Virus record (IMG/VR): IMGVR_UViG_3300020165_000007
Span: 206,384 to 270,383 of that record
Direction: 5' to 3' (one strand)
Length of the DNA stretch: 64,000 nucleotides
A model generated the notes under the pieces. The model was not told the DNA's origin. It was given only the letters and a program-made list of their open reading frames with translations, and did not search any database. Of the stretch, positions 3,167-62,143 are shown piece by piece. The translations under genes were made by a program, and so were the position numbers. The stretch's first letter is position 1. Each line of letters begins with the position of its first letter.

Positions 3167-3204
3167 AATAATAAATATAACATGTTGATAAATATAAGTT
3201 AAAT

Positions 3205-3233
3205 AAAAAAGGTGGAGAGTTTCCTCCCCACCT
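3205..3233 (-). terminator. Intrinsic terminator
   Basis: Minus strand AGGTGGGGAG-GAAA-CTCTCCACCT followed by a T run. Confidence 0.8.
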
Positions 3234-3281
3234 GTAAGGCCGACTTGGATGTCGAACTCCACCACTCGTTTCACAACGAGA

Positions 3282-3545
3282 TTAACTAACCCCCTCTTTC
3301 ATTTTAGTAACTGCGTACTGTCCGAGAGTCATGGAAGATGTGTTTCCTACAATCACACATTCCTTTAGAATATCATAAGGGATGTGAATAAGATTGTCAA
3401 CCCCGTTGAACATAGAAAGTGGATTTTTCAGAGCCAAAGCTGAGTGAACCGCATTAAGATAGATTTTGTGTTGGTTTTGTTCGTTATCAAACTCTTGATT
3501 CAACAACTGTCCAAACTGTGGGTGAATAATGACTACGTTTTTCAT
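3282..3545 (-). CDS. Hypothetical protein
   Basis: 87-aa ORF with TATATTTG at 3550-3557 just upstream. Confidence 0.7.
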   Translation of the reverse strand: MKNVVIIHPQFGQLLNQEFDNEQNQHKIYLNAVHSALALKNPLSMFNGVDNLIHIPYDILKECVIVGNTSSMTLGQYAVTKMKEGVS

Positions 3546-3563
3546 ATCACAAATATAAGAAAA

Positions 3564-3818
3564 TTAATTCATACAAACAAGTAATTCGTCCCTAATATCT
3601 GTTAATTCTTCGATAGTACAGTCTTCAAACAAATATTCATATTCTTCAGGTACCTCATCCACAAACAACTCATGTATTGGGTTATGTTTGATGTAATTGT
3701 TTAGGTGATGTAGAAAAAATGTATTGTCTTTTAAGTCACATTCGATTGATTGCCACCTCATAGGTTCGTTATGAATCATATTATCAAATAGGTTGAATGA
3801 GATTTCGTTATTTTCCAT
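3564..3818 (-). CDS. Hypothetical protein
   Basis: 84-aa ORF with TATATTTG at 3823-3830 just upstream. Confidence 0.7.
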   Translation of the reverse strand: MENNEISFNLFDNMIHNEPMRWQSIECDLKDNTFFLHHLNNYIKHNPIHELFVDEVPEEYEYLFEDCTIEELTDIRDELLVCMN

Positions 3819-3874
3819 ATGTCAAATATATACATTTATTACGATGTATCCTATTTTTTTAAAAAAAAAGTTAC

Positions 3875-4807
3875 ATGAGAATTATAGTTACAGGAGGATT
3901 AGGTTTTATAGGTTCTAATTTTGTTAATCTATTGAATGAGAGATTACCAAAAATCGAAGTAGTAATTTTAGATAAGATGACCTACGCAGCAGACCCAAAT
4001 AGTATTATTAAGAATAATAAATTAATTAAAAAAGATATTTGTGATGTCACACCTGAAGATTTAGGTGTATATGATTATATTGTTCATTTTGCCGCTGAAA
4101 GTCATGTAGATAATTCAATATCAGATGGTAGACCTTTTATGAACACGAACATTATTGGAACATTTAACTTAGTTGAATGTGCAAAACAAAATAAATCTTT
4201 GAAAAAGTTTATTCACATATCCACTGATGAGGTATACGGTGATATGGCAGATTCTGAATGGTTAAGTTCGAATGAGGACCACAACTTATCCCCAAGTTCT
4301 TATTACTCATCATCTAAAGCATCTTCAGACATGATTGTGTTGTCGTCTCACAGAACATTTGGTTTACCTTACCTTTTGACAAGAACTTGTAACAACTATG
4401 GTGAAAACCAAAATAAAGAGAAGTTTTTACCTAAAATTTTTGATTCTATAATTAACGAAAAAACAGTTCCTGTTTACGGTGATGGAAAACAGATTAGAGA
4501 GTGGATGTATGTTAAAGATAATGTTGAAGTAATCTTTGACTTGATGATGGATGATAAAGTCGTAAATGAAGTATACAATATTGGTACTGACAATACTTTC
4601 TATAATTTAGAATTAGTTAAAAAGATATCTGAAATTATCGGTAAAGACGTAACATTTGAATTTGTTACTGACCGTTTAGGTCACGATAGAAAATACAATT
4701 TAGATTGTACGAAACTTAAAGAATACTACAAGTCAAAGGGTAAAGAGTACCAACCAAAAGATATTATTGATTGGATGAATCAGTTCCTCCTTGAAGAAGT
4801 GGTATAA
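3875..4807 (+). CDS. rfbB: dTDP-glucose 4,6-dehydratase (RfbB/RmlB-like extended SDR)
   Basis: GGLGFIG, HFAAESHVD, ISTDEVYG, YSSSK, NNYG, DRLGHDRKY motifs. Confidence 0.92.
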   Translation: MRIIVTGGLGFIGSNFVNLLNERLPKIEVVILDKMTYAADPNSIIKNNKLIKKDICDVTPEDLGVYDYIVHFAAESHVDNSISDGRPFMNTNIIGTFNLVECAKQNKSLKKFIHISTDEVYGDMADSEWLSSNEDHNLSPSSYYSSSKASSDMIVLSSHRTFGLPYLLTRTCNNYGENQNKEKFLPKIFDSIINEKTVPVYGDGKQIREWMYVKDNVEVIFDLMMDDKVVNEVYNIGTDNTFYNLELVKKISEIIGKDVTFEFVTDRLGHDRKYNLDCTKLKEYYKSKGKEYQPKDIIDWMNQFLLEEVV

Positions 4808-5144
4808 GTATATTTAAGTACTTCTTTTCTTCTGTTCTATTCAATACATAGGACATGTCAAAGTCTATACCTAGTCTTTCTTTTATACTGTTTTCTAAGT
4901 ACTCCTGCATTTCAGGTGATTGTTCATAACCATAAAGAATAAGATTAGAAACTGATGGGAGTACTTTTAAATCAATAAAATCCAGTATATTTCTAACAAT
5001 TATAAAGTAAGGTTTACCATTCTTATGTAATACCGCAGTATCGTAGAGAAAACCTGGTAGGGTTCTATCTTCTAACTCTTGAAATTTGAGTCCATCGACA
5101 ATATTGTCTATTTGTTTCTTTAATACATCAGGTAGAGTACTCAT
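4764..5144 (-). CDS. Hypothetical protein
   Basis: 126-aa ORF, ATGA overlap with upstream gene. Confidence 0.7.
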   Translation of the reverse strand: MSTLPDVLKKQIDNIVDGLKFQELEDRTLPGFLYDTAVLHKNGKPYFIIVRNILDFIDLKVLPSVSNLILYGYEQSPEMQEYLENSIKERLGIDFDMSYVLNRTEEKKYLNILIPLLQGGTDSSNQ

Positions 5145-6055
5145 TTTTTTAATTTTTTTAAGTTAATAGGTACTACATTTCCTTTATCTAAATACATTAA
5201 TATATCCACTGATTTATAACTACCATTCAAATATCTTTTAATGAAATCTTCTTTTTGACCTACACCAGTTTTTACCTGTACAGTATATAGTTTTCCTTTA
5301 AATTCTACTATTAAGTCGATACCTAATTTCATATCTATAAAATCACCATCCCCGCCTTGTCTTACAACTGTACCTCCCCACTTATCACTTTCAATCCACT
5401 TTACCGCTTTATTTTCAGTCGCTAAACCTATTCTATCCGTAACCCCTAATTTTTTATCTGCTATATCTATTAAGTTATGCCCATCAAACATATTACCAAA
5501 CTCATCTTGGATATCATTTTTATATTTTTTTAAGATGTCTTTTAATCGGGTCGGGTTATTTTCCTCAGAAATTTGTTGTAAGATATCATTTCTACCTTGT
5601 TCAAATAAAATGTCAGTAACCAACTCAGAAAGTAAGGTATAATTTGTGTTTATCTTATTTGAGTGGTGCCACCTTCCGTTAACTTCAACTCTTTTAAAAT
5701 TTTCTAACTCTTCTAAGAGTTTATTGTAATACCAAGAATTTATTTTATTAGCATTTTTTAACTTAAGTAACCATTCTTTTGAGTTTTCCTTTTCCTCGTT
5801 ACTCATAGGTGATTTTATTTCATCCTGAATGTCGTTAACCAATTTTTTAAGACCTAATCCATTATCACTATGTAAAAATGCTCTTAAATTATTAATTTTT
5901 TTTCGTATCTCTGACTTATTAAAACTCACGGGCTCGTTATTGGGTATACCGTCCATATTTGGTATACCGTCATAGTTGTCCCCCCGCGGGTGCATTGGGT
6001 CATTGGGTCCGATAAGGTCTTGTTCTCTTAATATTTTACGTATAAGTTCTTTCAT
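5141..6055 (-). CDS. PD-(D/E)XK-superfamily nuclease-like protein with MKELIRKILRE leader
   Basis: C-terminal E..AVKW, D..LGIDLIV..TVQVKT pattern typical of restriction-endonuclease fold. Confidence 0.6.
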   Translation of the reverse strand: MKELIRKILREQDLIGPNDPMHPRGDNYDGIPNMDGIPNNEPVSFNKSEIRKKINNLRAFLHSDNGLGLKKLVNDIQDEIKSPMSNEEKENSKEWLLKLKNANKINSWYYNKLLEELENFKRVEVNGRWHHSNKINTNYTLLSELVTDILFEQGRNDILQQISEENNPTRLKDILKKYKNDIQDEFGNMFDGHNLIDIADKKLGVTDRIGLATENKAVKWIESDKWGGTVVRQGGDGDFIDMKLGIDLIVEFKGKLYTVQVKTGVGQKEDFIKRYLNGSYKSVDILMYLDKGNVVPINLKKLKK

Positions 6056-6093
6056 ACTTCAGGTAATTTCATGTTATTGTTTTTATCTATTAC

Positions 6094-6765
6094 TTATGAC
6101 CCATATAATCTCCATGCATTTCTATAGTTGTGGTCCATACCAGTCATATACAATCCGTACTTATCGATTATATCTAAAAAAGATTCTTTTGCTGCCATCC
6201 CTATTTCAGTAGTTACTTCATACAAATCATCTTGATGAATATCGTGGTCAATCATAAATAGTTCGTCAAAGTCCCATCTAGTATCATCATCTCTATCTAA
6301 AAATTGTACTGAACCGTTAGTTATGCGGACCTTCATACCTAATTCAGTACCATATGGATTTTCATCAGGGTTACCTTCCGTCCTACTGATAATCCCAATA
6401 GATAAAGGTGTCACATCCATTTCATATCCTCCTGAAGATATATGTCTTTTTTTACCTATACCTATTTCTTTTTTGGCTAATTCAAGTGCTTTATCATATC
6501 CACCATAGAATTTTATTTTCAGTTTGTCAATCTCCTCTTCGTATTCTAAACAATTTATACCAATATATCTACAGGGTGTTAGTTCTGTACCATTTTTACT
6601 CCAATAGTCAAATAAGAATTCTTCTACTTGAGGACTTAGTTCCTTTTTTTTAGGTGCTCCTTGCCAACCTTCACTCATTTCATACTCATCACTTTTAGGT
6701 GAAGCGTCAGTAACATGTGAATACTCTAAGTCTTCTCTCAATATTTTACGTATAAGTTCTTTCAT
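6094..6765 (-). CDS. Hypothetical protein with MKELIRKILRE leader
   Basis: 223-aa ORF; first 11 codons nearly identical to those of 5141..6055; TATTTAT at 6775-6781. Confidence 0.8.
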   Translation of the reverse strand: MKELIRKILREDLEYSHVTDASPKSDEYEMSEGWQGAPKKKELSPQVEEFLFDYWSKNGTELTPCRYIGINCLEYEEEIDKLKIKFYGGYDKALELAKKEIGIGKKRHISSGGYEMDVTPLSIGIISRTEGNPDENPYGTELGMKVRITNGSVQFLDRDDDTRWDFDELFMIDHDIHQDDLYEVTTEIGMAAKESFLDIIDKYGLYMTGMDHNYRNAWRLYGS

Positions 6766-6791
6766 AGTATGTTAATAAATATCGTTAAAGT

Positions 6792-6825
6792 AAAAAAACC
6801 TCAGTCGACTAAGACTGAGGTTTTT
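6792..6825. terminator. Bidirectional intrinsic terminator closing the ncRNA candidate
   Basis: AAAAACCTCAGTC-GACTAA-GACTGAGGTTTTT perfect hairpin flanked by A and T runs. Confidence 0.9.
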
Positions 6826-7680
6826 AATGTTATATATATTGGGGTAGGGAATTAAAGGACGCTGAGATTACACGTTTGAATGACTCGTCTTTTGTGGGAT
6901 TATTATTACTTTTTCCCCACTTATCCACCCCATTGACAGGGGTATCGAATCAGTGTCGGTTACTATCGGTAACCACTCGTATCGTTGATAACTACTCAAC
7001 CGTTACTAAAATCTCTTAAGACTTGCGGTCTCATAAAGGGTCGGCCAACCCACGAGTTGTTTCACAATCGACATCCTTAGACTTGCGGTCTGAAGGAAAA
7101 CTTCGTTGACAAAGGTCCGAAGTATTAGACACCTTTCGTCATCAACGCTCGAAGACTCTTGCTTTTCTAATTGATTTTAGATAAACAACATGGATTTATG
7201 AAAGATGCGCTTCGAGAGAAGTTCTATACCTTTGGAGTACAGAATGCTTCACACCTCTCTGTAAGTCTGTCAACTTACGGTAAGTTAGGACCACGTCGAC
7301 TTGTCGTCTCGGAGACCCCTCATACTGGTACTCAGCCCTACAACACCTGACAGGGTGTGTCGAACCGTCACCTGTAGCTTTTCCTATTGATATCACTATC
7401 TCAACTCTGATATTCCACGGACTCAGAGTGGTTTCATCCCTTTAGCAGTTGCCCTTAGGGTTTTGACCGTAGCCACTTTGTTTAGTTGTCAGAGTAAACT
7501 CTGCGGATATCTGAGAGTTGCTCAACACTCTTCAATCCCTTTAGTCCTGTTACCAGGGTTATCTAACGACGCTAAACCGCCGATGACTAATAACTCACTG
7601 TGATTTTAAAAAAAGGGGGTTAATCTTTTTTGATATAAACTCGATTCAGTGAGTGTTCGTCATTATTATTTCAAAGAACT
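6826..7680 (-). ncRNA. Large structured ncRNA candidate (~850 nt; GOLLD size class, family unconfirmed)
   Basis: No credible ORF over ~1 kb in a gene-dense genome; GC-richer than flanks; many hairpins; TAnnTTTG promoter upstream and terminator downstream. Confidence 0.75.
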
Positions 7681-7684
7681 TCTA

Positions 7685-7692
7685 CAAAGATA
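7685..7692 (-). promoter_or_regulatory. Bacteroidota sigma70 -7 element (TATCTTTG) for the ncRNA
   Basis: Exact TAnnTTTG match just upstream of the structured region; second match TATATTTG at 7779-7786. Confidence 0.7.
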
Positions 7693-7822
7693 AGAAACTT
7701 TTTTCTTAATCTCCAATTTTTTTTTACTTTTTTTTAAAAGGTAATATATAAATATACTGTTTTGTCTAAAAGGTTGTACAAATATATAAAAAATCTTTCA
7801 TATATCAATCAAAAACACCATA

Positions 7823-8439: not shown

Positions 8440-8456
8440 GTATAATATTTATGTAT

Positions 8457-8813
8457 ATGAAGGTAATGATAAATAATAACATTTTTAAAGTCAAATTATG
8501 TACGAGACAAAAATCGATAGAGGAGGGAATGCAAAATAAAAACTTTAACGAATCTTTTAATGGAATGTTATTTATGATGCCAAAAACTACCGAACAAAGT
8601 TTTTGGACGTATAACTGTATTATTCCTTTAGATATATTAATGATTAATAGAGGCGAAATAAATGAGGTACATCATAACTGCAAACCTTGTCACAAACAAT
8701 CACAATGTGATTCATATAAAGGTTACGGTGGTGAAGTATTAGAATTACCTGGAGGTACTTGTAAAAGTTTAGACATTAAAAAAGGAGACTCAGTCTCCTT
8801 TTCTTTAGTTTGA
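8457..8813 (+). CDS. DUF192 family protein (start corrected to MKVMINNN)
   Basis: GMLFM, SFWTYNCIIPLDILMI, VLELPGG motifs; track's longer start overlaps the NUDIX gene; TATTTAT at 8446-8452. Confidence 0.85.
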   Translation: MKVMINNNIFKVKLCTRQKSIEEGMQNKNFNESFNGMLFMMPKTTEQSFWTYNCIIPLDILMINRGEINEVHHNCKPCHKQSQCDSYKGYGGEVLELPGGTCKSLDIKKGDSVSFSLV

Positions 8814-10534: not shown

Positions 10535-10568
10535 AGTAACTTATTTTAATATAAATATCACGTATAAC

Positions 10569-10595
10569 AAAAAACCCCTCACAAGGAGGGGTTTT
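10569..10595. terminator. Intrinsic terminator
   Basis: AAAACCCCTC-ACAAG-GAGGGGTTTT. Confidence 0.85.
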
Positions 10596-10618
10596 AAGTT
10601 AATTTAAATATTTTAATC

Positions 10619-13264: not shown

Positions 13265-13269
13265 TTTTT

Positions 13270-14517: not shown

Positions 14518-14518
14518 A

Positions 14519-17699: not shown

Positions 17700-17799
17700 C
17701 TTATAATACTTTTATGATAAATATTAGTAGTTTATAAAATAAACTTTTTAAAGACTATTTATATATTAAATAAACTCTCACTATTAAAAAATTAAACTC

Positions 17800-17931: not shown

Positions 17932-17951
17932 GTAAAATCCGCCATAAACTT

Positions 17952-17978
17952 AAAAAGGGGTGTAATACATCCCTTTTT
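17952..17978 (+). terminator. Intrinsic terminator
   Basis: AAAAAGGGGTGT-AAT-ACATCCCTTTTT. Confidence 0.75.
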
Positions 17979-18026
17979 CTATTTATAGTATTTTTATTTA
18001 TTGGTATATTTCATAAAAAGTATAAT

Positions 18027-21698: not shown

Positions 21699-24452
21699 TT
21701 AGAAGTTATATCTTAAAGATGCATTCCAAGTTCTACCAAATCCAAACCACACTGAGTTACGTGTGTCAATACCGTTCCACGTATCTGATGTTTCAGATGC
21801 GTGAATATTAGTGTTTGACTCCGCAATGTATGTAGTGTCGAATAAGTTATTTACGTTAACTCTAAACGTTGCATTGTTACCTAACAAGTCAAAACGAGTG
21901 GTAACACCCAAATCAACTAAATTGTATGACGGTAACTTCAACGCCCCTTGGTTATCGGGTGTGAAGAAGTCAGAACCTGTGATTGAGTAGTCAGCGTAAA
22001 GTCCGTCAACATATCTCATACCTAAGTCTACATTCACACCTCTAGTTACTCTGTAGTCAACACCTAAGTTTCCAACAACTTGTGCTGCGTCACCAACTTT
22101 AGCCCCTTCAGTATAAAGAACTCCTGTACCAATCTCTTCTTGATTCTCATCAAACAAGGTGGTTTCAAAATCCTTTGTATACTTCCAATCTCCCAATGAT
22201 AACATACCTGTAAGTTTTAGGTTGTTAGTAGGTCTATATGTAGACTCTAACTCGATACCATTGTGTTGAACGTCAATATCTCTAAACTGTGCAAATCCAT
22301 CGACACCTTGAGCATTAGTCAATGAAAGTGCTCTAAATCTATTACCCCATGTTGTTGCATATGCATTAACATTAACAGTAAGCTCGTCACCTAAGTATCC
22401 GTAACCTAACTCAAATGAAGTAATTTCTTCATTTTGTAAGTCGTCATTAATGTCATTACCATAACTTGGGAATACCGCTGAGAAGTTTGGTTGACGTGAG
22501 ATGAATCCCGCGTTAGCAAAAACATTAGACTTTTCATCGATATTATAGTTAGCACCACCTTTAATGTATCCACCACCTAAATTAGCCGTTTCTGAAATTG
22601 GATTACCTGGTTGGTCAAAGTAATCTTCTCTTTGGAATGATTGGTTCGATAACCCCGCTTGTACAACCGCGTTTATTCTTCCATCATCATTATATTCAAT
22701 AAGTCCGTTTACACCGGCCCATCCAACGTTTCCTACATTATAGTAGTCAATTTTTGGACCGTTAAGACCTGTGTTATTAAACGGACTAGCGTTTACAGTT
22801 GTGTTAACAAACTGACCTACACTATTATCATTACCTGTTGAGTAGTATGCGTCAAAACCCATTAGGTTATTTACTGTACGATAGTGATAACCTTTGTACT
22901 TTCTGAGGTCAATACCTACAGAAGCCCTAATCTTGTCTTTATCGTACTCTAAATTAGAGATTGCACCTACCCAGTCGTGTGAGTTCATAGACGCTCTACG
23001 AATCATCCCACTTCTATTAACACCACCTTCATCATATCCATTTGAACCGATGAGTTGTCCGAAAAAAGGACTGTCCATTAAGGTTGAGTCAGGAATTGTT
23101 CCGTCAGCATCAATACCATAAGTCTGTGCCCCTGATTGGTTATCAGCGACAATAGCGTCAAAATCAATTGTACCATCATCGTTACGAAATTGTGTTGTAC
23201 TGTCTTCATACATGAATTCATACAAATCCTTTCTATAAGGATGGACATCGTAGTTTCTACCACGAGGACCTGTTCCTCCACCTCGACCAGCAGAACCATA
23301 GACTGAAGTATTCAATGTTAAATCTTCGTTGATGTCCCAATCCCAGTTAAAGGTTGCAAGTGGTTTGTTATAAAAGTTTCTTCTCATAGAGAACTCTTCC
23401 CCATTTAAAGTACCTCCGTTTGTGTTCCAACGAGCGTTGATACCATCGTCATTCTGTTCACCAAATGTTTGAAAGTCTCTAATAGAAACCCAAACGTCTC
23501 TTTGGTGGTGCCATTGACCCGCACCTAAAATAGATAGGTTCAATGCGTGTTTTGAACCTTCAGGTTGGTAACCTACAGCTCCGAAGTATGTCCAACCTTC
23601 ACCACTGGTGTTGTCGACATATCCATTACCTGCCCATCTACTCATTAAGAACGATGACGCCCATCCATTCTCATTTTTACCGGTATTGTAGTTAACACTT
23701 GTCTTAGTGTAACCATCATTACCAATAGTTTCAGATACTGAACCACCTTGTTCTTTCTCCGCCGCTTTAGTAGAAATAGAAACGGTACCACCAACAGATG
23801 GAACCGCAAGACGAGTAGCACCCAATCCTCTCTGGATTTGAATACCTGAAGCAACGTCAGTAAGACCTTGCCAATTAGACCAATATACCCATCCATTTTC
23901 CATATCATTAACAGGTTGACCGTTAATTAGGAATGATGTGTTACGTTGGTCGAAACCTCTAAGAGATATTCTTGAGTCACCATAACCACCACCTTGTTTC
24001 GTAGCATAGACACCAGGTGTTCTATTCATGATTTCAGGGAATTCTTGGTTTCCGACTTTCAAAGCAATCTCTGACGGACCAATGGTTGATACCGCAACTG
24101 GTGTTTCTCTCACTTTCGCAAAGTCAACAACGTTAACGATTACGGATGCCTCATCCAAACCCAACGCAGTAGCGGTTAATGATATGGTACCCATATCTTT
24201 TAGTGCCGGTGTAGTTATTGTTTCATACCCGATAAAACGTACAACTAGGTTTCCTGTGGCCTCACTGTTGAGAGTGAATTCACCTGATACATTAGTTGAT
24301 GTTCCTCGTGTGTTACCTTCAAGATAGACATTCGCTCCGATGAGCTCATTACCTGTCTTAGAGTCAACAACTTTACCTGTAATTTGGGAGAATAGACTCG
24401 TAGTTGAGACCATCATTACTCCTAAGATAAACAATCGATTAATTAATTTCAT
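21699..24452 (-). CDS. TonB-dependent receptor with N-terminal carboxypeptidase-regulatory-like domain
   Basis: Signal peptide; GKVVDSKTGNELIGANV; plug TPGVY..ISLRGF..LINGQP; C-terminal NNLFD..GFGRTWNASLRYNF. Confidence 0.93.
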   Translation of the reverse strand: MKLINRLFILGVMMVSTTSLFSQITGKVVDSKTGNELIGANVYLEGNTRGTSTNVSGEFTLNSEATGNLVVRFIGYETITTPALKDMGTISLTATALGLDEASVIVNVVDFAKVRETPVAVSTIGPSEIALKVGNQEFPEIMNRTPGVYATKQGGGYGDSRISLRGFDQRNTSFLINGQPVNDMENGWVYWSNWQGLTDVASGIQIQRGLGATRLAVPSVGGTVSISTKAAEKEQGGSVSETIGNDGYTKTSVNYNTGKNENGWASSFLMSRWAGNGYVDNTSGEGWTYFGAVGYQPEGSKHALNLSILGAGQWHHQRDVWVSIRDFQTFGEQNDDGINARWNTNGGTLNGEEFSMRRNFYNKPLATFNWDWDINEDLTLNTSVYGSAGRGGGTGPRGRNYDVHPYRKDLYEFMYEDSTTQFRNDDGTIDFDAIVADNQSGAQTYGIDADGTIPDSTLMDSPFFGQLIGSNGYDEGGVNRSGMIRRASMNSHDWVGAISNLEYDKDKIRASVGIDLRKYKGYHYRTVNNLMGFDAYYSTGNDNSVGQFVNTTVNASPFNNTGLNGPKIDYYNVGNVGWAGVNGLIEYNDDGRINAVVQAGLSNQSFQREDYFDQPGNPISETANLGGGYIKGGANYNIDEKSNVFANAGFISRQPNFSAVFPSYGNDINDDLQNEEITSFELGYGYLGDELTVNVNAYATTWGNRFRALSLTNAQGVDGFAQFRDIDVQHNGIELESTYRPTNNLKLTGMLSLGDWKYTKDFETTLFDENQEEIGTGVLYTEGAKVGDAAQVVGNLGVDYRVTRGVNVDLGMRYVDGLYADYSITGSDFFTPDNQGALKLPSYNLVDLGVTTRFDLLGNNATFRVNVNNLFDTTYIAESNTNIHASETSDTWNGIDTRNSVWFGFGRTWNASLRYNF

Positions 24453-25336: not shown

Positions 25337-25394
25337 AATTTTTTATTATTTAAAATGTTTTACTAATCAAATATACAACATTTTTTTTAATAAA

Positions 25395-28818: not shown

Positions 28819-28843
28819 ATAAATATATAGTTAACTTAAAAGA

Positions 28844-31491: not shown

Positions 31492-31505
31492 TAAAAATAA
31501 ATATC

Positions 31506-37264: not shown

Positions 37265-37273
37265 ATATAAATA

Positions 37274-38427: not shown

Positions 38428-39016
38428 CTTTTATTTTATTTATAAATATATCGAAATCAAAAGCAGGATTCAAATCAGTATTAATTATATCATAATTACT
38501 ATTACTAGATATACCTTTAAATCTTTCTATTTTGTCTACCTTAACATTATGTCCTACACTCATTTTAGGTATTTCGTAATCCTCACATAGTTTATTCACT
38601 ACATTAATCAGTGATTCCATTTGGTTATCTGTGTATGGTTGCCAAAAGTGATGACCTCTCCATTTTCTACTATATATTTCATCTTCATGTATATCACCTA
38701 TCCAATTAATAAAATTATGAGTTAAAGGGTTTTTTCTCAACCACCCTAAATTTTCCAAACAAACGATTATAGACTGTTTGTTACTCTTGTTAGTTTCCAT
38801 ATAATAACTGTACGTGTCCGTTGGTATTATACTATATATGTCCCCTTCTCTTCCGATAATAAAATGTGGTAATTTTTTATTATCTCCATTATACCTGTAC
38901 TTTAATGAGGAAATATAATCTTTTAGATTTCTAGAAGTATGAGTGAGAATTATTTGTTTTTTTTTCTTATATCTTCCTACAGGTTTAAAACCATCAATAA
39001 TATTAACTTTTATCAT
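38420..39016 (-). CDS. N-acetylmuramoyl-L-alanine amidase (Amidase_2-like)
   Basis: IILTHT, PHFIIGREGDI, SIIVCLEN, YTDNQMESL, VGHN. Confidence 0.8.
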   Translation of the reverse strand: MIKVNIIDGFKPVGRYKKKKQIILTHTSRNLKDYISSLKYRYNGDNKKLPHFIIGREGDIYSIIPTDTYSYYMETNKSNKQSIIVCLENLGWLRKNPLTHNFINWIGDIHEDEIYSRKWRGHHFWQPYTDNQMESLINVVNKLCEDYEIPKMSVGHNVKVDKIERFKGISSNSNYDIINTDLNPAFDFDIFINKIKDE

Positions 39017-40037: not shown

Positions 40038-40075
40038 TTGATTATTTTTAGTCTACCTATAAATAGACTAAGTTA

Positions 40076-40891
40076 TTACAAATAATCAAAAAGTATACTA
40101 CTCTCGTTTCTTAGTTTTCTTAAAGCCTTTTCTTTAATTTGTCTAACTCTTTCCTTTGTTAGGTTAAAATCTTTACCTATTTCTTCTAAAGTTTTAGGTG
40201 TTCCGCTTATTCCGTAATAATCTTTAACTATTACTTGCTCTCTTTTATCTAAAGTTTTCATAATCGCAAATAATTTACCTTTTAAAGCCTTATCATCATT
40301 AAAAGTTGCGTCAGGACTGCTAGAGTTTTCATTCTCAATTAAATCAAGTAACGTATCACCTTCCTCATTGATGTGATTATCTAAACCTGTAACTTTCGGT
40401 AAAGAAGTGAATTTTGCATCCATCTCTTTATTTGTCTTTTGACACTCTTTTTTAGCCTTATAAAGGTCTTGGACTACATTTACCGGTAGACGGATTGTAC
40501 GAGAGTTCTCATTTAATGATTGCAAAATTGATTGCTTAATCCACCAAACCGCGTAAGATATAAATCTTAGGTTCTTAGTCCAATCAAAGTTTTTTATCGC
40601 CTTCATGAGTCCGTAATTACCCTCAGCGATTAAATCACTTAAGTCTAACCCCTGATTTTGGTATTGTTTGGCCACTGTAATAACAAACCTTAGATTACCT
40701 TGTAAAAGTTCTTGGTGAATTTCTTCTTTTTGTTTTTCAGTACATTCGACTGAACATATGATTTTTGCCAATTCTTTTTCTCTTTCTGGCGTCATAACTT
40801 TAATCTTACGGATATCTTTAAGATACATTTGTATCTCATCTTGATTGATAGGATTGTGATTGTTCATTAAATTAAGTTTTTGAGTATTCAT
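40076..40891 (-). CDS. Sigma70-family RNA polymerase sigma factor (Bacteroidota primary-sigma-like, no region 1.1)
   Basis: NLRFVITVAKQYQNQGL, DLIAEGNYGL, FISYAVWWIKQSI, TLEEIG..LTKERVRQIKEKALRKL. Confidence 0.95.
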   Translation of the reverse strand: MNTQKLNLMNNHNPINQDEIQMYLKDIRKIKVMTPEREKELAKIICSVECTEKQKEEIHQELLQGNLRFVITVAKQYQNQGLDLSDLIAEGNYGLMKAIKNFDWTKNLRFISYAVWWIKQSILQSLNENSRTIRLPVNVVQDLYKAKKECQKTNKEMDAKFTSLPKVTGLDNHINEEGDTLLDLIENENSSSPDATFNDDKALKGKLFAIMKTLDKREQVIVKDYYGISGTPKTLEEIGKDFNLTKERVRQIKEKALRKLRNESSILFDYL

Positions 40892-41506: not shown

Positions 41507-41896
41507 TTAAAGTTGTATTTCAAATCTGTTCTTCATTCTCTCAATAGATTCTGAAGGAACTCCATGAATATTATCACCACTATGACGATTTTCCACAATC
41601 AAAGAGAATACCAAATAACCTTTTTCTTCAGACATATCTATATATGGTTTCATCTCCCACTCTTGTGTTGAAGTGTTAGATACTACGATTCTCTCAACCT
41701 CTTCGTCCATCCATTCATTAACCATATTCTGACACCACTTGTGTGCGATAGGTAGACTCGTAGGGTCAAAGTTATATTCTCCATCATCATTAGTAAAATA
41801 CATGTCGGCTTCGATGTGATATCCACCAAGAGATTCTGCAAGAGTGGACTTACCACTACCGGGAAGTCCTCGAAGGATATAAAGTTCTTTTTTCAT
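41507..41896 (-). CDS. AAA_33 P-loop kinase (polynucleotide kinase-like)
   Basis: LRGLPGSGKST, VSNT, HGVP. Confidence 0.85.
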   Translation of the reverse strand: MKKELYILRGLPGSGKSTLAESLGGYHIEADMYFTNDDGEYNFDPTSLPIAHKWCQNMVNEWMDEEVERIVVSNTSTQEWEMKPYIDMSEEKGYLVFSLIVENRHSGDNIHGVPSESIERMKNRFEIQL

Positions 41897-42195
41897 TATG
41901 CAAATTTTACTTCAGTATTAACAACTTTAACCACATTCACAACACTATCGTTATTAATCATCTCAATAACACGGTAAGTGAACCCTTCTTTGGTTTCACC
42001 CGGTAGATTCTCTACCGGAAGTTTGTTACCTTTACGGTATCCAACCTGCATGTTACTCAACGCAAATGCAGTACCACTACTACTATGACCTCCATAAAAG
42101 CTATACTTAAGGCTACCATCGACCAAGTTACACACAAGTGTTTTCTTGTTCTTCATACCATCTTCAAGATGGAAATGGAATATTTTTTCTGACAT
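41896..42195 (-). CDS. Hypothetical protein
   Basis: 99-aa ORF; TATATTTG at 42215-42222. Confidence 0.75.
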   Translation of the reverse strand: MSEKIFHFHLEDGMKNKKTLVCNLVDGSLKYSFYGGHSSSGTAFALSNMQVGYRKGNKLPVENLPGETKEGFTYRVIEMINNDSVVNVVKVVNTEVKFA

Positions 42196-42233
42196 GTTTA
42201 TTTTGTTTGTGGTACAAATATAGGTATAAAGTT

Positions 42234-44175: not shown

Positions 44176-44213
44176 AAGACAAATATAAGGAAAGTTTTTT
44201 ATTAATCAAAATA

Positions 44214-45131: not shown

Positions 45132-45163
45132 ACTTTTTATTTTTATTTATACAAATATAAGGA

Positions 45164-46639: not shown

Positions 46640-46663
46640 GACAACAAATATAGAACATTTTAT

Positions 46664-47206
46664 TCATAAAGCAAAATCGTTAACATATATTTGAAAAAAT
46701 ATGTCGACTGGAACGGTGACTACATCTCCGTTTGGAAAGTAAAATTCAGAACTTAGTTTTTTTGATTTAATAAGCGTTAATTTCTGTATCTTATCTACAC
46801 AATTATATTTCGTTTTATACTCAAAGTAGTCGGGTAAGATGAACGCAACCACATCCGAAAACTGTGAAGCATGATTTATAAATTTAACCGCTAATTTACC
46901 TCTGTTCCCAAATGGTGGACCACCTATAGTTATATACTTACCTTCATCTTTAGGGTTCCACTCAAGAAAATTACCTTCAACAATCTCTTCATGTCTAGGC
47001 TCTATATCTATCCCGAATCTCCTATCTTTAGGTAGTTTAGTTAAAAAAGCTCCGTCACCGGCTGACGGTTCAATGTATGTATACTCATCTGAGTTTATTT
47101 CTAACTCATTTAGTTTTTCTTGTAGTAGACTTAAACATTCGTTAACCATGTCCTTATGTGCAAAGTATTGGTCTCTTTCCTCATATTTTATAATATTTTT
47201 ATTCAT
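46664..47206 (-). CDS. SAM-dependent methyltransferase-like protein with atypical GPPF motif
   Basis: DQYF, IEPSAGDGAF, GIDIEP, IGGPPFG, VAFILP. Confidence 0.75.
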   Translation of the reverse strand: MNKNIIKYEERDQYFAHKDMVNECLSLLQEKLNELEINSDEYTYIEPSAGDGAFLTKLPKDRRFGIDIEPRHEEIVEGNFLEWNPKDEGKYITIGGPPFGNRGKLAVKFINHASQFSDVVAFILPDYFEYKTKYNCVDKIQKLTLIKSKKLSSEFYFPNGDVVTVPVDIFFQIYVNDFAL

Positions 47207-50217: not shown

Positions 50218-50244
50218 GATATTTATATTTAAAGTTAATTTACT

Positions 50245-54153: not shown

Positions 54154-54154
54154 A

Positions 54155-56519: not shown

Positions 56520-56554
56520 AGAATGAAGATAAGTAAAATATACTTAATAATCAA

Positions 56555-57157: not shown

Positions 57158-57163
57158 GTAATA

Positions 57164-59383: not shown

Positions 59384-59414
59384 TGATTATAAATATTCTT
59401 TTAGTCATTTTATT

Positions 59415-62114
59415 TTAAGTTAGTGGAGCAGTACAGTCGTATATTGTTATATTTTCAGCGATGGGGGTATTAGCGTTAACCACATTTCCACAGTTACTAT
59501 TATTTAACCTTAGATTAGATACTTGTAATGTCGTATTATATGTTCCGACCATTCTACACTCTGGAGAACAATCAACTCCATTACCACTTATAGTTACAGT
59601 TTGAGTTACAACACCGTTTAATGAAGTATCTGTACTACTTAAATTTAAAGAATTTACAAAGTTTGTGAAGGTTTCAGTAATTTGTTGTGTTGGTTTTACC
59701 GTACATCCTGTATCGACAGATGTTGTTACGGTTGCTGAGGTATTATATGGTATATTTAAATTACCGTTTTTAGTAATTGTATGTACATAACTAAATGATG
59801 ATATTCCAGTATCCCTATATTGTCTAATGTGATTTAAACTTAAATTGAAGGTTATGTCTTCACCCGCACTTAACGCAGGATTAATCTGAACTCCGTAGTT
59901 CCAAGTTCTTGTTCCATTACTACTGTTAGTTACATTTGATGTTAAACTTACAGTATATGTCGTTGAATCCTCACCTTGGTTAATTGTAAATACTGTAGTA
60001 GTGGTATTTCCTGAATTATCCTGCACCTCCCCTAAGTAATTACCTGACGATAAACCGTTAAATATACCAACATTACTATATGCTGGGTATGGTAATATGT
60101 TTTGCACTCTATATTGATATGGAGGATATCCCCCGTCTGCAGTTAGTATTACCGCACCATTTTCATTCCCTTTACACACCTCGTCACTTATTACAGAATT
60201 TAAAGTTAATGGTATCCCTAAACATGAACCTTCAGTCATTTCCCATGTAAGTGGTTGATTATTACCTAAGTTAGTAAAGTTACCTGTAGGTATAGTCTCG
60301 TTAACATTTCTAACCATACCTCCAACACCTATATTAGTCCATGGAGTTATCTCCCATCTATTTAAAGAGATATTATATTTTAAAGTTAAGGTGTTTGGTG
60401 TGTTTTCCCACACAAAATAATTATTTACATCCGTACCACTAGGTGTAAAATCGTATTGATTATTCGAGTTGGAAAAACATAAGGTAGGTTGAAATATTGG
60501 GTTAGGTGGGGATGGTTGACATTTCAAACAACTATCATATATGTTAGATACTGTTAATGCTGAGAATGTTTGACCTGTAGAAAGTAACCTTTGGTTATAT
60601 GAATAACAACCGTTTGTGTTAGTAAAATTATATATTGTGTTACCTGTTAGTCCAGCTATTGGTGATGTGTAAATTTTTTCGGTTGATAGACTGATACCTG
60701 AGAAGAACTCATCTATTACTTCACCTACCACTCCCCCTTGGAATCCTCCTACTGTGGGGTCTACTTGCCAATCAAAATTCTTTAATCCTGCACCGTTTTT
60801 ATATGTTGGGTTTAAGTTAGTATATGTAGTAGTACCAGTTAATCCTGAATATACGTTTGTGGTGGTTAACGCGCTTAAATTTAAACTTAATGGTCCCACA
60901 TTTGTTATAGGTGTATCGTATTTATCCTCAAAGGTTGTTGCGGATATAGTCGTCCCTTCTACCGCAGCAACAGTATGTTGGATATATGGTATCTCTGCCG
61001 TGTTATTTTCAATAACAGGGAAAATAAATCCTTCAAATCTTCCACTCTCATCTTTTATGTCTTCCCATACTTTCAAAAAGGATTCATAGTCATGAGTAAA
61101 TCTATTCGACGGTTCCTGTTGGGTTGTCGCACTCCATCCCGTACCTGACAAAGCAAAAGGGTTGGTGAATAGATAGTTTTTATTTGGCTGTCCACTTATT
61201 GTGTTAACATTACCATGATATAGTCCGGTATCTCCATCTGCCTCATCTGATACTATTATACATAAATAGTTTTTATCACCACCAATAAAATCGCCATATA
61301 TTGTTTCGTAATTACCTGTCATAGATGGTGTAACTGTGAAGGGTACACCCATACTTCTAACATCATCACTACCATAAGCACCTGTTAAGGTAAAACCATT
61401 ATTAATTCTCTGATATATATCTGATATTAAACCTCCAGCAACTGATGTACTAAAATTAAAAGATGGTTGTCTAGGTACACATTTTCCACCGTCACTAGAT
61501 TCACACCAATTCGAGTTATATGTTGAATAGTTTACTGATTGTCCGTCGAGTCCAAAAGATTTTATCTCTGTTATTCCATCTGATAGCGTTCCACCTGTTA
61601 AAGAACCCAAATATGGGTATGTTGACCACCATAACCAATTCTCAGCATTGTGATTTTCTTTACCTACTACACCTTCATATAATAATCCACCAAATCCATT
61701 ATTCTTTTTAGTCTGATACCAAGTTCTTATACTTTCCGAGGCTTGTGCCGCTGTTGTATAATTTAAAGATGTTCCATCATAAAATACAAATATATTCGGG
61801 TTAAATTCTTCTTCACATTTTATAAATTCATCTAAATAAAACGTATCATTACCTACAGTACATGTGACAGTCGTAGTATAATCACCATAATAATCTGTTA
61901 CTGTAGCAACATAGTTTCCTGATTGTAAGTTACCTATATAGTTACCGACACCTCCATTAGCCCAAGTAACTGTATAAGGTGATGTCCCTCCGTTAATAAA
62001 TAACTGAATAGAACCGTCTTGAGTTTCAGGACTTGTAGCATTTGTAGGGTTACAAGTCACCTCAAGAGGTCTTAAGCTAATAACATTACAATTATTTTGA
62101 TTAATTTCTGACAT
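59415..62114 (-). CDS. Putative virion protein with SprB-like repeats and possible vWA-like domain (start corrected to MSEINQ)
   Basis: DGSIQLFINGGTSPYTVTW and NGAVILTADGGYPPYQY; FYDGTS and IVSDE; TATTTAT at 62120-62126. Confidence 0.6.
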   Translation of the reverse strand: MSEINQNNCNVISLRPLEVTCNPTNATSPETQDGSIQLFINGGTSPYTVTWANGGVGNYIGNLQSGNYVATVTDYYGDYTTTVTCTVGNDTFYLDEFIKCEEEFNPNIFVFYDGTSLNYTTAAQASESIRTWYQTKKNNGFGGLLYEGVVGKENHNAENWLWWSTYPYLGSLTGGTLSDGITEIKSFGLDGQSVNYSTYNSNWCESSDGGKCVPRQPSFNFSTSVAGGLISDIYQRINNGFTLTGAYGSDDVRSMGVPFTVTPSMTGNYETIYGDFIGGDKNYLCIIVSDEADGDTGLYHGNVNTISGQPNKNYLFTNPFALSGTGWSATTQQEPSNRFTHDYESFLKVWEDIKDESGRFEGFIFPVIENNTAEIPYIQHTVAAVEGTTISATTFEDKYDTPITNVGPLSLNLSALTTTNVYSGLTGTTTYTNLNPTYKNGAGLKNFDWQVDPTVGGFQGGVVGEVIDEFFSGISLSTEKIYTSPIAGLTGNTIYNFTNTNGCYSYNQRLLSTGQTFSALTVSNIYDSCLKCQPSPPNPIFQPTLCFSNSNNQYDFTPSGTDVNNYFVWENTPNTLTLKYNISLNRWEITPWTNIGVGGMVRNVNETIPTGNFTNLGNNQPLTWEMTEGSCLGIPLTLNSVISDEVCKGNENGAVILTADGGYPPYQYRVQNILPYPAYSNVGIFNGLSSGNYLGEVQDNSGNTTTTVFTINQGEDSTTYTVSLTSNVTNSSNGTRTWNYGVQINPALSAGEDITFNLSLNHIRQYRDTGISSFSYVHTITKNGNLNIPYNTSATVTTSVDTGCTVKPTQQITETFTNFVNSLNLSSTDTSLNGVVTQTVTISGNGVDCSPECRMVGTYNTTLQVSNLRLNNSNCGNVVNANTPIAENITIYDCTAPLT

Positions 62115-62143
62115 TATATATAAATACAATCATAAAATGATTT

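What the first reader, a model, noticed from the sequence alone, without database searches (positions are those of the whole stretch)
3171..62126. Two upstream motifs partition the genes: host-type TAnnTTTG versus TATTTAT
Seen: TAnnTTTG (plus-strand CAAAnnTA) at 3550, 3823, 7685, 7779, 25368, 29707, 42215, 44180, 45152 and 46645, before small hypothetical, MTase, RM and repair genes. TATTTAT (ATAAATA on plus for minus genes) at 3171, 3188, 6775, 7748, 8446, 10551, 17717, 17756, 17980, 28819, 31497, 37267, 38442, 40059, 59389 and 62120, before structural-like and leader-bearing genes. Established: TAnnTTTG is the Bacteroidota -7 element; T4 late promoters are TATAAATA on the sense strand. Notably, this sense-strand motif is essentially the reverse complement of the T4 one and also a near variant of the host -7 element (TATATTTG versus nATATTTA). 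Inference: an early host-sigma programme and a late programme read by a phage factor.
Basis: partly seen in the sequence, partly recalled or inferred. Interest (0 to 1): 0.65.

Follow-up and report, generated by a model that had tools for sequence, protein, structure and literature searches.

The report
Two promoter classes in a marine jumbo phage
This 270-kb marine phage of Bacteroidota carries two kinds of promoter, the ordinary host type and a phage-specific one that differs from the host core mainly by one base and is most likely read with a phage-encoded sigma factor: a familiar phage strategy with a consensus I found no description of.

Summary
Both motifs are real and sit at all 26 coordinates given. 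The window is the last 64 kb of a 270-kb uncultured marine T4-superfamily myovirus.

- **Host-type class (H).** It is a canonical Bacteroidota promoter: TTTG, 19-20 nt, then TATATTTGTA. It precedes small ORFs, methyltransferases, a kinase, a sigma-factor operon and non-coding RNAs (GOLLD in the window; tmRNA and tRNAs elsewhere).
- **Phage-type class (P).** TATTTAT is not over-represented in the window as a whole (47 against 56 expected). In AT-matched intergenic DNA on the sense strand it is strongly enriched (genome 67 against 11.6±3.3; window 10 against 2.2±1.4).
- **Promoter-like behaviour of P.** It lies 4-5 or 11-19 nt from start codons, directly after terminators, in divergent intergenic regions and upstream of two RNA genes. 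It has no -33 element. It shows no strand bias in a Flavobacteriaceae genome.
- **Relation of the two cores.** They share TATTT-N-TA. G at -5 goes with T-12/A-11 and the -33 TTG; A at -5 goes with neither.
- **Candidate readers.** The phage encodes a sigmaA-like factor (window 40076-40891, behind an H promoter) and a second divergent sigma-like protein. No phage RNA polymerase was found.

The host-then-phage programme is supported. "Late only" is not, because P also heads replication and recombination genes. Timing, transcription start sites and the reading factor remain untested.

The parts
46645..46652 (-). Host-type promoter -7 element (TATATTTG) with TTTG at -33; 5 nt before the ATG of the 491-aa methyltransferase-like gene (leaderless geometry)
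45152..45159 (-). Host-type promoter with -33 TTTG; 20 nt before the 305-aa gene
44180..44187 (-). Host-type promoter with -33 TTTG; 4 nt before the ATG of the polynucleotide kinase gene (leaderless geometry)
42215..42222 (-). Host-type promoter with -33 TTTG; it heads the run 41896-42195 / ATPase / DUF6576 / sigma factor
   Evidence: conserved in relative L006
40076..40891 (-). Phage sigma factor of 271 aa (regions 1.2, 2 and 4), a sigmaA-like paralogue
   Evidence: PHROG 351 at E 2e-55; Pfam Sigma70_r2, r4 and r1_2 above cut-off; 40-45% identical to FCB-group sigmaA
29707..29714 (-). Host-type -7 element before the DNA methyltransferase gene; no canonical -33 spacing here
   Evidence: host-type element before the orthologue in 7 of 9 relatives
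25368..25375 (-). Host-type promoter with -33 TTTG; only a 43-aa ORF follows (or a small RNA)
7779..7786 (-). Host-type promoter, first of three tandem elements upstream of the GOLLD RNA
7748..7754 (-). TATTTAT element between the two host-type promoters upstream of GOLLD; no ORF follows it
7685..7692 (-). Host-type promoter (TATCTTTG) with -33 TTG. A start about 5 nt downstream would give an RNA of about 850-890 nt running to the terminator, in the size range I recall for GOLLD
6859..7259 (-). GOLLD RNA (conserved part matched by Rfam RF02032)
   Evidence: 299.8 bits against a gathering score of 150, E 1.7e-84
3823..3830 (-). Host-type -7 element 4 nt before the ATG of an 84-aa ORF; no -33 TTG
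3550..3557 (-). Host-type promoter with -33 TTG; 4 nt before the ATG of an 87-aa ORF
62120..62126 (-). TATTTAT 5 nt before ATG 62114 of the 899-aa SprB-repeat protein
59389..59395 (-). TATTTAT 5 nt before the ATG of the 739-aa gene; the recombination/replication genes follow with no further exact motif
40059..40065 (-). TATTTAT just downstream of the sigma gene, in or overlapping a hairpin, 21 nt before the 344-aa gene
   Evidence: present before the orthologue in 13 of 13 distinct relatives
38442..38448 (-). TATTTAT inside the 3' end of the upstream gene, 14 nt before the 193-aa gene; poorly conserved (2 of 19)
37267..37273 (-). TATTTAT 5 nt before ATG 37261 of an 83-aa gene; conserved in 3 of 16 relatives
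31497..31503 (-). TATTTAT 5 nt before the ATG of a 56-aa ORF
28819..28825 (-). TATTTAT abutting the first ATG of the LRR protein gene; a second in-frame ATG lies 15 nt downstream
17717..17723 (-). TATTTAT 17 nt before the 543-aa gene, in a divergent intergenic region
17756..17762 (+). TATTTAT on the plus strand in the same divergent region, 37 nt before a 43-aa ORF
17980..18001 (+). Two plus-strand TATTTAT copies (17980 and 17995) directly after a terminator (17957-17978), 40 and 25 nt before the 276-aa gene
10551..10557 (-). TATTTAT 11 nt after the terminator at 10569-10591 and 16 nt before the 104-aa gene
8446..8452 (+). TATTTAT on the plus strand, 4 nt before in-frame ATG 8457 of the plus-strand ORF ending at 8813
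6775..6781 (-). TATTTAT 10 nt after the terminator at 6792-6820 (end of GOLLD) and 9 nt before the 223-aa gene
3171..3194 (-). Two TATTTAT copies (3188 and 3171) after the terminator at 3205-3232; the proximal one lies 4 nt before ATG 3166
50220..50226 (+).

Best explanation
The genome uses two promoter classes.

Class H is the ordinary Bacteroidota sigmaA promoter: TTTG at -33, 19-20 nt, then TATATTTGTA. The unmodified host holoenzyme reads it. It drives small early-type ORFs, methyltransferases, a kinase, PRPP synthetase, a Lon-like protease, the tRNA array, tmRNA, GOLLD RNA and the operon holding the phage sigma factor.

Class P has the core (a)TATTTAT(a). It keeps the host -7 core TATTT-N-TA but has A instead of G at -5. 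It needs neither T-12/A-11 nor a -33 element.

Inference: host core RNA polymerase reads P when it carries a phage-encoded sigma. My first choice is the 271-aa sigmaA paralogue, which is made from an H promoter. The divergent 250-aa sigma-like protein is the alternative.

P switches on most of the genome: virion genes, and also helicase and recombination genes.

Both classes often sit 4-5 nt before the start codon. By the known 4-5 nt distance from the -7 element to the start site, this predicts leaderless or nearly leaderless mRNAs.

Shown here: motif anatomy, enrichment, orientation, spacing, context, conservation in relatives, and presence of the sigma genes.

Inferred: that P is a promoter, which factor reads it, and the temporal order.
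For: Enrichment and orientation:
- AT-matched intergenic enrichment and strand bias.

Spacing:
- The distance from the end of the motif to the start codon is bimodal. There are 13 cases at 4-5 nt and about 39 at 11-19 nt. The same two modes appear in 30 related loci.
- Host-type sites show the same 4-5 nt class.
- In F. johnsoniae the -7 element lies 4-5 nt from the start site (PMC6847099).

Context that requires fresh initiation:
- In about 10 places P begins 13 nt or less after an intrinsic terminator; three of these are in the window.
- Of 64 genes whose upstream neighbour lies on the other strand, 32 carry an exact P or H. Of 139 co-directional genes with gaps under 25 nt, 21 do.
- P also stands upstream of GOLLD and overlaps the promoter of the tmRNA gene, where nothing is translated.

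Anatomy:
- In the unbiased TATTTN table, N=G goes with TA at -12/-11 (15 of 23) and TTG at -33 (14 of 23). N=A goes with neither (18 of 91 and 15 of 91). T at -4 is about 80% in both.
- The A+T-rich peaks near -18 and -26 upstream of P match those reported for host promoters.

Phage specificity:
- A Flavobacteriaceae genome shows H at 29 sense against 6 antisense, but P at 11 against 8.

Factors:
- The 271-aa sigma has regions 1.2, 2 and 4 and is the only full sigma70-type gene in the record.
- Its recognition helices in regions 2.4 and 4.2 are almost identical to those of Bacteroidota sigmaA. Regions 1.2 and 2.3 differ, and region 3 is about 25 aa shorter.
- It lies behind an H promoter. In relatives its operon carries H and/or P in 14 of 17 distinct upstream sequences.
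- No multisubunit RNA polymerase was found.

Conservation:
- P is kept before the 344-aa gene in 13 of 13 distinct relatives, with diverged flanks.
Against: - There are no transcription-start or time-course data. The metatranscriptome contigs covering the region cannot show RNA ends.
- The whole-window count of TATTTAT is not above chance, so the case rests on position and orientation.
- The 271-aa sigma keeps the host-like region 4.2 and 2.4 helices. It could therefore read H-type rather than P-type promoters. A promoter that needs only the -10-like element would fit a minimal T4 gp55-like factor better.
- The operon of the 250-aa sigma-like gene has no recognisable H or P within 3 kb upstream, here or in most relatives. 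The cascade is therefore incomplete.
- About 20 genes that must have their own promoter show neither motif, although some of those ORFs are doubtful.
- Several internal P sites are poorly conserved.
Confidence: 0.68

Rival explanations
1. P is read by the divergent 250-aa sigma-like protein (genome 103598-104350, outside the window), as a T4 gp55-type late factor. The 271-aa sigmaA paralogue then merely replaces or supplements host sigmaA on H-type promoters. This differs from the main explanation only in which factor reads P.
For: - The virion module is of the T4 superfamily: the portal is gp20-like.
- Group 2 jumbo phages are reported to carry both a minimal and an RpoD-like sigma (PMC7824862).
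- P has no -35/-33 partner, like T4 late promoters.
- The 271-aa sigma has the same region 4.2 and 2.4 helices as the host factor.
- The 250-aa protein is a conserved core gene. It has a weak Sigma70_r2 match, falls in virus-only 'sigma factor' Atlas clusters, and gives sigma factors as its top, though weak, fold hits.
Against: - It has no sequence match to any solved sigma or to gp55.
- All fold matches have E above 0.001.
- Its own operon shows no host-type promoter that would make it early.
- In relatives, P sites stand in front of the operon of the 271-aa sigma, which looks like autoregulation by that sigma.
Confidence: 0.3
2. P is a weak variant of the host -7 element that host sigmaA itself uses. 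It may do so unaided or after phage modification or appropriation of the holoenzyme (MotA/AsiA-style), with no phage sigma needed for recognition.
For: - The P and H cores are identical at 8 of 9 aligned positions.
- Both share the upstream A+T-rich periodicity and the same distance to start codons.
Against: - G-5 and T-12/A-11 are nearly invariant in F. johnsoniae promoters (PMC6847099), and P lacks them.
- P shows no strand bias in a Flavobacteriaceae genome, whereas H does.
- The clean linkage of G-5 with T-12/A-11 and the -33 TTG, against A-5 with none, argues for two readers.
- The phage carries conserved sigma genes.
Confidence: 0.1
3. TATTTAT acts at the RNA level, as a translation enhancer or an endoribonuclease processing site placed before selected genes, and is not a promoter.
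For: - It lies at fixed short distances from start codons.
- Many short-spacing copies sit in 11-12 nt junctions directly after the stop codon of the upstream gene.
- Bacteroidota lack Shine-Dalgarno sequences and rely on other upstream cues (PMC6847099).
Against: - It is found just after intrinsic terminators and in divergent intergenic regions, where no upstream transcript exists.
- It is found before GOLLD and tmRNA genes.
- Three quarters of the genes lack it.
- The A+T-rich features conserved at helical spacing lie upstream of the motif, that is in DNA that would not be transcribed.
- The undoubted host promoters show the same 4-5 nt class.
Confidence: 0.06
4. An unrecognised phage RNA polymerase reads P, either a highly diverged multisubunit enzyme or a single-subunit one.
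For: - The record is only about 88% complete.
- Many large proteins have no family assignment.
- Diverged jumbo-phage polymerases can escape Pfam.
Against: - There is no match to the RNA_pol_Rpb2_6 or Rpb1_2 families.
- T4-superfamily (group 2) jumbo phages are reported to lack polymerases and to carry sigma factors instead (PMC7824862).
- The P core and its geometry mimic the host -7 element.
- A hairpin-promoter mode of the N4 type is not supported.
Confidence: 0.04

Closest known systems
Bacteroidota sigmaA (sigma-ABfr) promoters: -33 TTTG / -7 TAnnTTTG (F. johnsoniae analysis, PMC6847099)
   Same: Class H matches in full. It has T-12, A-11, T-8, T-7, T-6 and G-5, no G at -10/-9, TTG near -33 with a 19-20 nt spacer, and A+T-rich stretches upstream. 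Class P shares the TATTT core, T-4/A-3 and the upstream A+T pattern.
   Different: - Class P has A at -5, no fixed T-12/A-11 and no -33 element.
- P is not strand-biased in a Flavobacteriaceae genome.
- Many phage promoters of both classes lie 4-5 nt from the ATG. In F. johnsoniae 87% of leaders exceed 10 nt.
T4 late promoters (TATAAATA at -10, read by gp55 with gp33 and the gp45 clamp)
   Same: - A single A+T-rich 7-8 nt element with no -35 partner.
- It stands in front of virion genes of a T4-superfamily phage.
- The distance to the presumed start site is similar.
- A phage-encoded sigma-like factor is present.
   Different: - The sense-strand sequence is the reverse complement. TATAAATA is 4 sense against 31 antisense here.
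- The motif is closer to the host -7 element than to the T4 element.
- It also precedes replication and recombination genes.
- No recognisable gp55 homologue was found.
Phage sigma cascades such as Bacillus phage SPO1 gp28 followed by gp33/gp34 (from my own knowledge)
   Same: Host sigma reads the early promoters. One of these drives a phage sigma gene, and that sigma redirects host core polymerase to a distinct promoter class.
   Different: - SPO1 promoters have both -35 and -10 elements that are unlike the host ones.
- Here the phage class is a one-base variant of the host element, without an upstream partner.
- Nothing has been shown experimentally here.
RpoD-like and minimal sigma factors of group 2 jumbo phages (PMC7824862)
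   Same: A T4-like jumbo phage without its own polymerase, carrying one near-complete RpoD-like sigma and one divergent small sigma-like protein.
   Different: That survey catalogues the genes only. No cognate promoter motif is given for Bacteroidota phages. This lineage has no cultured relative: the best match in GenBank phage records is below 40% identity.

Membership tests
Bacteroidota sigmaA promoter (class H) | -7 element TAnnTTTG (TAHHTTTG) on the sense strand upstream of genes | tested here: met
   21 sense against 5 antisense in co-directional intergenic DNA. 19 against 5.4±2.2 in shuffles. No G at -10/-9 in most sites.
Bacteroidota sigmaA promoter (class H) | -33 element TTTG/TTG about 19 nt upstream | tested here: met
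   TTG at the right distance in 14 of 21 near-gene intergenic sites, against 10 of 69 for TATTTAT. The logo shows TT at -35/-34 and G/T at -33/-32.
Bacteroidota sigmaA promoter (class H) | Transcription start 4-5 nt downstream of G-5 | not testable with these tools
   The only indirect evidence is six sites with exactly 4-5 nt to the ATG. The RNA contigs give no ends.
Bacteroidota sigmaA promoter (applied to class P) | Near-invariant T-12, A-11 and G-5 | tested here: not met
   With the TATTT cores aligned, P has A at -5 in all sites, TA at -12/-11 in 18 of 91, and TTG at -33 in 15 of 91.
T4-type late promoter | TATAAATA on the non-template (sense) strand at -10 | tested here: not met
   TATAAATA is 4 sense against 31 antisense. 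Its reverse complement TATTTATA is 31 against 4.
T4-type late promoter | No -35 element | tested here: met
   There is no conserved position upstream of P beyond A+T richness. Terminator hairpins of unrelated sequence occupy that space.
T4-type late promoter | A gp55-family sigma, with the gp33 co-activator and the sliding clamp | tested here: inconclusive
   The 250-aa sigma-like protein has a weak Sigma70_r2 match at E 7.6e-4, Atlas 'sigma factor' clusters, weak fold hits, and no sequence hit to solved chains. gp33 and the clamp were not searched for.
sigma70 family (271-aa protein, window 40076-40891) | Regions 2 and 4 above the Pfam gathering scores | tested here: met
   Sigma70_r2 scores 58.3 bits (cut-off 24), Sigma70_r4 56.6 (24.1) and r1_2 29.9 (22). 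Solved SigA chains match at E 1e-44.
GOLLD RNA (RF02032) | Covariance-model score at or above the Rfam gathering threshold | tested here: met
   299.8 bits against 150, over the full model length 1-416.
N4-type hairpin promoters | Motif presented in the loop of a short hairpin | tested here: not met
   Loop-constrained folding of 77 P sites equals shuffled flanks (mean -0.42 against -0.46 kcal/mol). Only the site after the sigma gene sits in a hairpin.

The most novel reading that the evidence does not exclude
A phage paralogue of the Bacteroidota primary sigma factor has been retuned, through changes in regions 1.2 and 2.3 and a shortened region 3. It then reads a promoter that is the host -7 element with one base changed (G-5 to A) and with no requirement for T-12/A-11 or the -33 element. 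A single-nucleotide code would thus separate host-read from phage-read genes. Many genes of both classes would be expressed as leaderless mRNAs in a phylum where leaders are the rule. The lineage is abundant in marine and estuarine metagenomes, so this would be a widespread, undescribed transcription programme.
Probability: 0.35. Interest if true: 0.6.

Novelty: new member of a known kind. Interest (0 to 1): 0.45.

Why it matters
- Transcription of Bacteroidota phages is almost unstudied outside the crAss-like group, and this lineage has no cultured member.
- A well-defined pair of promoter consensus sequences gives an immediate way to annotate transcription units, correct start codons and predict early versus phage-dependent genes in hundreds of related metagenomic contigs.
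- The near identity of the two cores offers a compact test system for how the unusual Bacteroidota sigma reads the -7 element, especially G-5.
- It could also supply orthogonal promoter and sigma pairs for genetic tools in Flavobacteriia.
- The predicted leaderless starts bear on translation initiation in a phylum without Shine-Dalgarno sequences.

Tried and rejected
- **Whole-window over-representation of TATTTAT.** Rejected: 47 against 55.7 expected. Only the positional tests carry the case.
- **Metatranscriptomes.** Four RNA runs hold the region, but only as assembled contigs. Recurrent contig ends (for example 37251 and 42190) look like strain-variant breaks, not RNA ends. No transcription start site can be read from them.
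- **A third promoter class.** Among 73 upstream regions lacking both motifs, no convincing motif emerged, only one-mismatch variants (TATTTAC and TACTTAT, each 6 sense against 1 antisense).
- **Subclasses of P.** Comparing the structural block with the rest, and short with long spacing, showed only that short-spacing sites usually abut the upstream stop codon.
- **H-driven genes as recently acquired, G+C-rich morons.** Rejected genome-wide: G+C is 0.322 against 0.321.
- **P lying in hairpin loops (N4-like).** Rejected.
- **A promoter for the operon of the 250-aa sigma-like gene.** None found within 3 kb, here or in relatives.
- **Cultured relatives.**
  - GenBank phage records have no near DNA match.
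  - They have no match to the 250-aa protein.
  - The 271-aa sigma matches at below 40% identity.
  - The first 50 kb of the nearest Flavobacterium myovirus by portal shows no P bias.
- **Literature.** Searches for this motif or for promoters of such phages found no description.
- **Limits of the method.** Gene calls are my own longest-ORF calls, so some small ORFs and start codons are uncertain.

Full report
**What the window is**

The window is bases 206384-270383 of a 270,383-bp IMG/VR virus record (33% G+C, about 88% complete).

- PHROG scans find a tail sheath, tail tube, baseplate wedge, head-tail adaptor, portal and protease outside the window.
- The portal is gp20-like, with more than 2,500 T4-type phage records matching it. 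The record is therefore an uncultured jumbo myovirus of the T4 superfamily.
- It occurs nearly identically in marine, estuary and seawater metagenomes from at least 15 studies.
- GenBank phage records hold no close relative.
- SprB repeats, a SusC-like receptor and a sigma closest to FCB-group sigmaA point to a Bacteroidota host, probably Flavobacteriia.

**The observation**

Whether the motifs exceed chance depends on the test.

- Counted over the whole window on both strands, TATTTAT is not over-represented: 47 against 55.7±7.8 in dinucleotide shuffles.
- The motif is, however, concentrated in the 7% of the genome that is intergenic, and on the sense strand.
- In the intergenic sequence upstream of genes (80% A+T, each region shuffled on its own), TATTTAT is 67 against 11.6±3.3 genome-wide and 10 against 2.2±1.4 in the window. 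TAnnTTTG is 19 against 5.4 and 7 against 1.4.
- In co-directional spacers the sense:antisense counts are 51:11 for TATTTAT, 31:4 for TATTTATA and 21:5 for TAnnTTTG. The sense strand there is A-rich, so the bias towards a T-rich word is conservative.
- ATATTTAT is the single most enriched 8-mer upstream of genes. It is again the top 8-mer in 30 related viral loci whose sigma is 67-84% identical.

**Class H**

The TAnnTTTG sites are complete Bacteroidota promoters. The intergenic consensus is TTTG, 19-20 nt, TATATTTGTA. This matches the F. johnsoniae logo of T-12, A-11, T-8, T-7, T-6 and G-5 (PMC6847099).

About 25 stand in intergenic DNA across the genome. They precede:
- the tRNA array and a tmRNA gene (outside the window);
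- in the window, a GOLLD RNA (6859-7259, minus strand, 299.8 bits);
- two small ORFs, three methyltransferase-like genes and a polynucleotide kinase;
- the operon that ends with a sigma factor.

A start about 5 nt below 7685 and the terminator at 6792-6820 would give an RNA of about 850-890 nt. That is in the size range I recall for this family; the length is my recollection, not a tool result.

**Class P is a DNA-level promoter element, not an RNA signal**

Five kinds of context support this.

1. In about ten places P begins 13 nt or less after the T-run of an intrinsic terminator. Three are in the window: 3205-3232, 6792-6820 and 10569-10591. The next gene has no other candidate promoter, and the unrelated hairpins fill the space where a -35 element would lie.
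2. Of 64 genes whose upstream neighbour is on the opposite strand, and which therefore need their own promoter, 32 carry an exact P or H and 12 more a one-mismatch P. Of 139 co-directional genes with spacers under 25 nt, 21 do.
3. P copies stand before GOLLD (7748) and overlap the tmRNA promoter, where nothing is translated.
4. The positions conserved beside the core are A+T-rich patches about one and two helical turns upstream. The same feature is reported for host promoters at -18 and -28. They would lie in untranscribed DNA.
5. The distance from the motif to the start codon is bimodal, at 4-5 nt (13 cases) and 11-19 nt (about 39). The undoubted H promoters show the same 4-5 nt class, and so do the relatives.

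The -7 element sits 4-5 nt from the start site in F. johnsoniae. The short class therefore predicts mRNAs that begin at, or 1-2 nt before, the AUG. That is a prediction, not an observation.

**How P relates to H**

I tabulated every TATTTN in sense-strand upstream spacers, with no prior pattern.

| Base N | Sites | TA at -12/-11 | T at -4 | TTG at -33 |
|---|---|---|---|---|
| G | 23 | 15 | 19 | 14 |
| A | 91 | 18 | 71 | 15 |
| C | 5 | 3 | 3 | 0 |

N = T occurs 29 times and looks like T-run background (T at -4 in only 9).

- The two consensus sequences, TATATTTGTA and nATATTTATA, agree at 8 of 9 aligned positions. The base at -5 predicts whether the upstream determinants are present.
- It makes the resemblance to the T4 late promoter look incidental. 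TATAAATA itself is 4 sense against 31 antisense.
- A different register, with the TA of TATTTAT at -12/-11, cannot be excluded without start-site data. Both registers are compatible with the spacing.
- P is phage-specific in the one control I could run. In 400 kb of a Flavobacteriaceae MAG, H is 29 sense against 6 antisense, while P is 11 against 8.

**Who reads P**

No multisubunit RNA polymerase was detected, in line with what is reported for T4-like group 2 jumbo phages (PMC7824862). Two sigma-like genes exist.

*The 271-aa protein (window 40076-40891, minus strand):*
- It has regions 1.2, 2 and 4 above the Pfam cut-offs.
- It is extremely conserved and abundant in metagenomes.
- It is 40-45% identical to the short primary sigma of Bacteroidota and other FCB phyla.
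- Aligned with ten such sigmas, it keeps the region 2.4 helix (YAVWWIKQSILQSL) and the region 4.2 helix (TKERVRQIKEKA) almost unchanged.
- It differs in region 1.2 and in region 2.3 (FDETRGF becomes FDWTKNL). It has a six-residue insert after region 1.2 and lacks about 25 residues of region 3.
- Regions 1.2 and 2.3 face the downstream half of the -10-like element in solved holoenzymes. This is my own knowledge, not tested here. It is where H and P differ.
- Its operon follows the H promoter at 42215. In relatives the DUF6576-sigma pair is preceded by H, P or both in 14 of 17 distinct upstream sequences. That fits early expression followed by self-reinforcement.

*The 250-aa protein (outside the window):*
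- It has only a weak Sigma70_r2 match.
- It falls in virus-only 'sigma factor' clusters in the Atlas.
- Its fold (pLDDT 70) gives sigma factors as top but non-significant hits.
- It has no hit among solved sequences.
- It could be the gp55 analogue and the true reader of a promoter with no -35 element.
- Its own operon has no recognisable promoter.

I put about two to one on the 271-aa factor. The main claim is only that a phage sigma on host core polymerase reads P.

**The programme**

- P precedes virion genes (baseplate wedge, tube, sheath, adaptor, portal, protease), and also a DnaB helicase.
- In the window, the two P sites at 62120 and 59389 head a run with no further exact motif. It holds RuvC, primase, exonuclease, a methyltransferase, SbcD, SbcC and dCMP deaminase.
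- A crude assignment that ignores terminators puts about 186 ORFs downstream of P, 54 downstream of H and 59 downstream of neither.
- 'Host-read first, phage-sigma-read for most of the genome' fits. 'Late only' does not. The temporal order is an inference from the position of the sigma gene behind an H promoter.

**Conservation**

- P before the 344-aa gene that follows the sigma gene is present in 13 of 13 distinct relatives, with flanks that have diverged and even with changed synteny.
- At that site the motif lies in or overlaps a hairpin whose stem differs between relatives, probably the terminator of the sigma operon. P sites in general are not in hairpin loops.
- H before the methyltransferase is kept in 7 of 9 relatives. 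In four of the six examples printed it lies 4 nt from the ATG.
- Internal P sites (37267, 38442) are labile.

**Verdict**

The kind of system is classical: host promoters for early genes and a phage sigma for the rest. This consensus and its one-base relation to the host element have no description that I could find, and the lineage is uncultured. I rate it a new member of a known kind and of moderate interest. It still needs 5'-end mapping or in vitro transcription.

Noticed in passing
window 6859-7259 (-), probably extending to about 7680: A GOLLD RNA (Rfam RF02032, 299.8 bits) is encoded by this marine Bacteroidota jumbo phage. It is preceded by three tandem promoter elements (host type, TATTTAT, host type) and followed by a strong terminator.
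   Followed up: partly
window 21699-24452 (-): A phage-encoded 917-aa SusC-like TonB-dependent receptor (CarboxypepD_reg, Plug and beta-barrel domains) lies in a locally G+C-richer stretch (0.40), bracketed by terminators. Neither promoter motif stands in front of it.
   Followed up: no
genome 103598-104350 (+) = L004:1315-2067: A second, highly conserved 250-aa sigma-like protein is always translationally coupled to a conserved 276-aa upstream gene. It sits at the end of a glycosyltransferase/aminotransferase cluster, and no recognisable promoter lies within 3 kb.
   Followed up: partly
genome 135635-136024 (+) and about 163.8-176.4 kb (L045, L047, L048): The phage carries a tmRNA gene and an array of at least 13 tRNA genes, both served by host-type promoters. 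At the tmRNA gene a TATTTAT overlaps the host-type -7 element.
   Followed up: partly
window 40040-40075 (-) and the same place in relatives L006-L033: The TATTTAT just after the sigma gene lies in the loop of, or overlaps, a hairpin. Its stem sequence differs between relatives, and in some it is followed by a T-run (a combined terminator and promoter).
   Followed up: partly
window about 42190-42200: Metatranscriptome contigs of a co-occurring strain diverge exactly upstream of the 99-aa gene. In place of the window's host-type promoter with a 19-nt leader they carry TATATTTA, then 4 nt, then ATG.
   Followed up: no
window 46686-46693 (+): A plus-strand TATATTTG lies 34 nt from the minus-strand promoter at 46645, facing into the 3' end of the minus-strand gene 46664-47206. 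It has no -33 element and no ORF of 40 aa or more behind it. It may be an antisense start or chance.
   Followed up: no
genome 128523-131679 (+): A 673-aa ATP-dependent protease (PHROG 4871, E 4.5e-243) and a peptidase are each preceded by host-type promoters.
   Followed up: no
window 59415-62114 (-): An 899-aa protein with an SprB repeat (a repeat of Bacteroidota gliding-motility adhesins) lies directly upstream of the recombination/replication genes.
   Followed up: no
L231 (Flavobacterium phage vB_FspM_immuto_2-6A, first 50 kb): This cultured Flavobacterium myovirus shows a different strand-biased upstream word (TATATTA, 10 sense against 1 antisense) rather than TATTTAT. That hints at another phage-specific promoter variant.
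   Followed up: no
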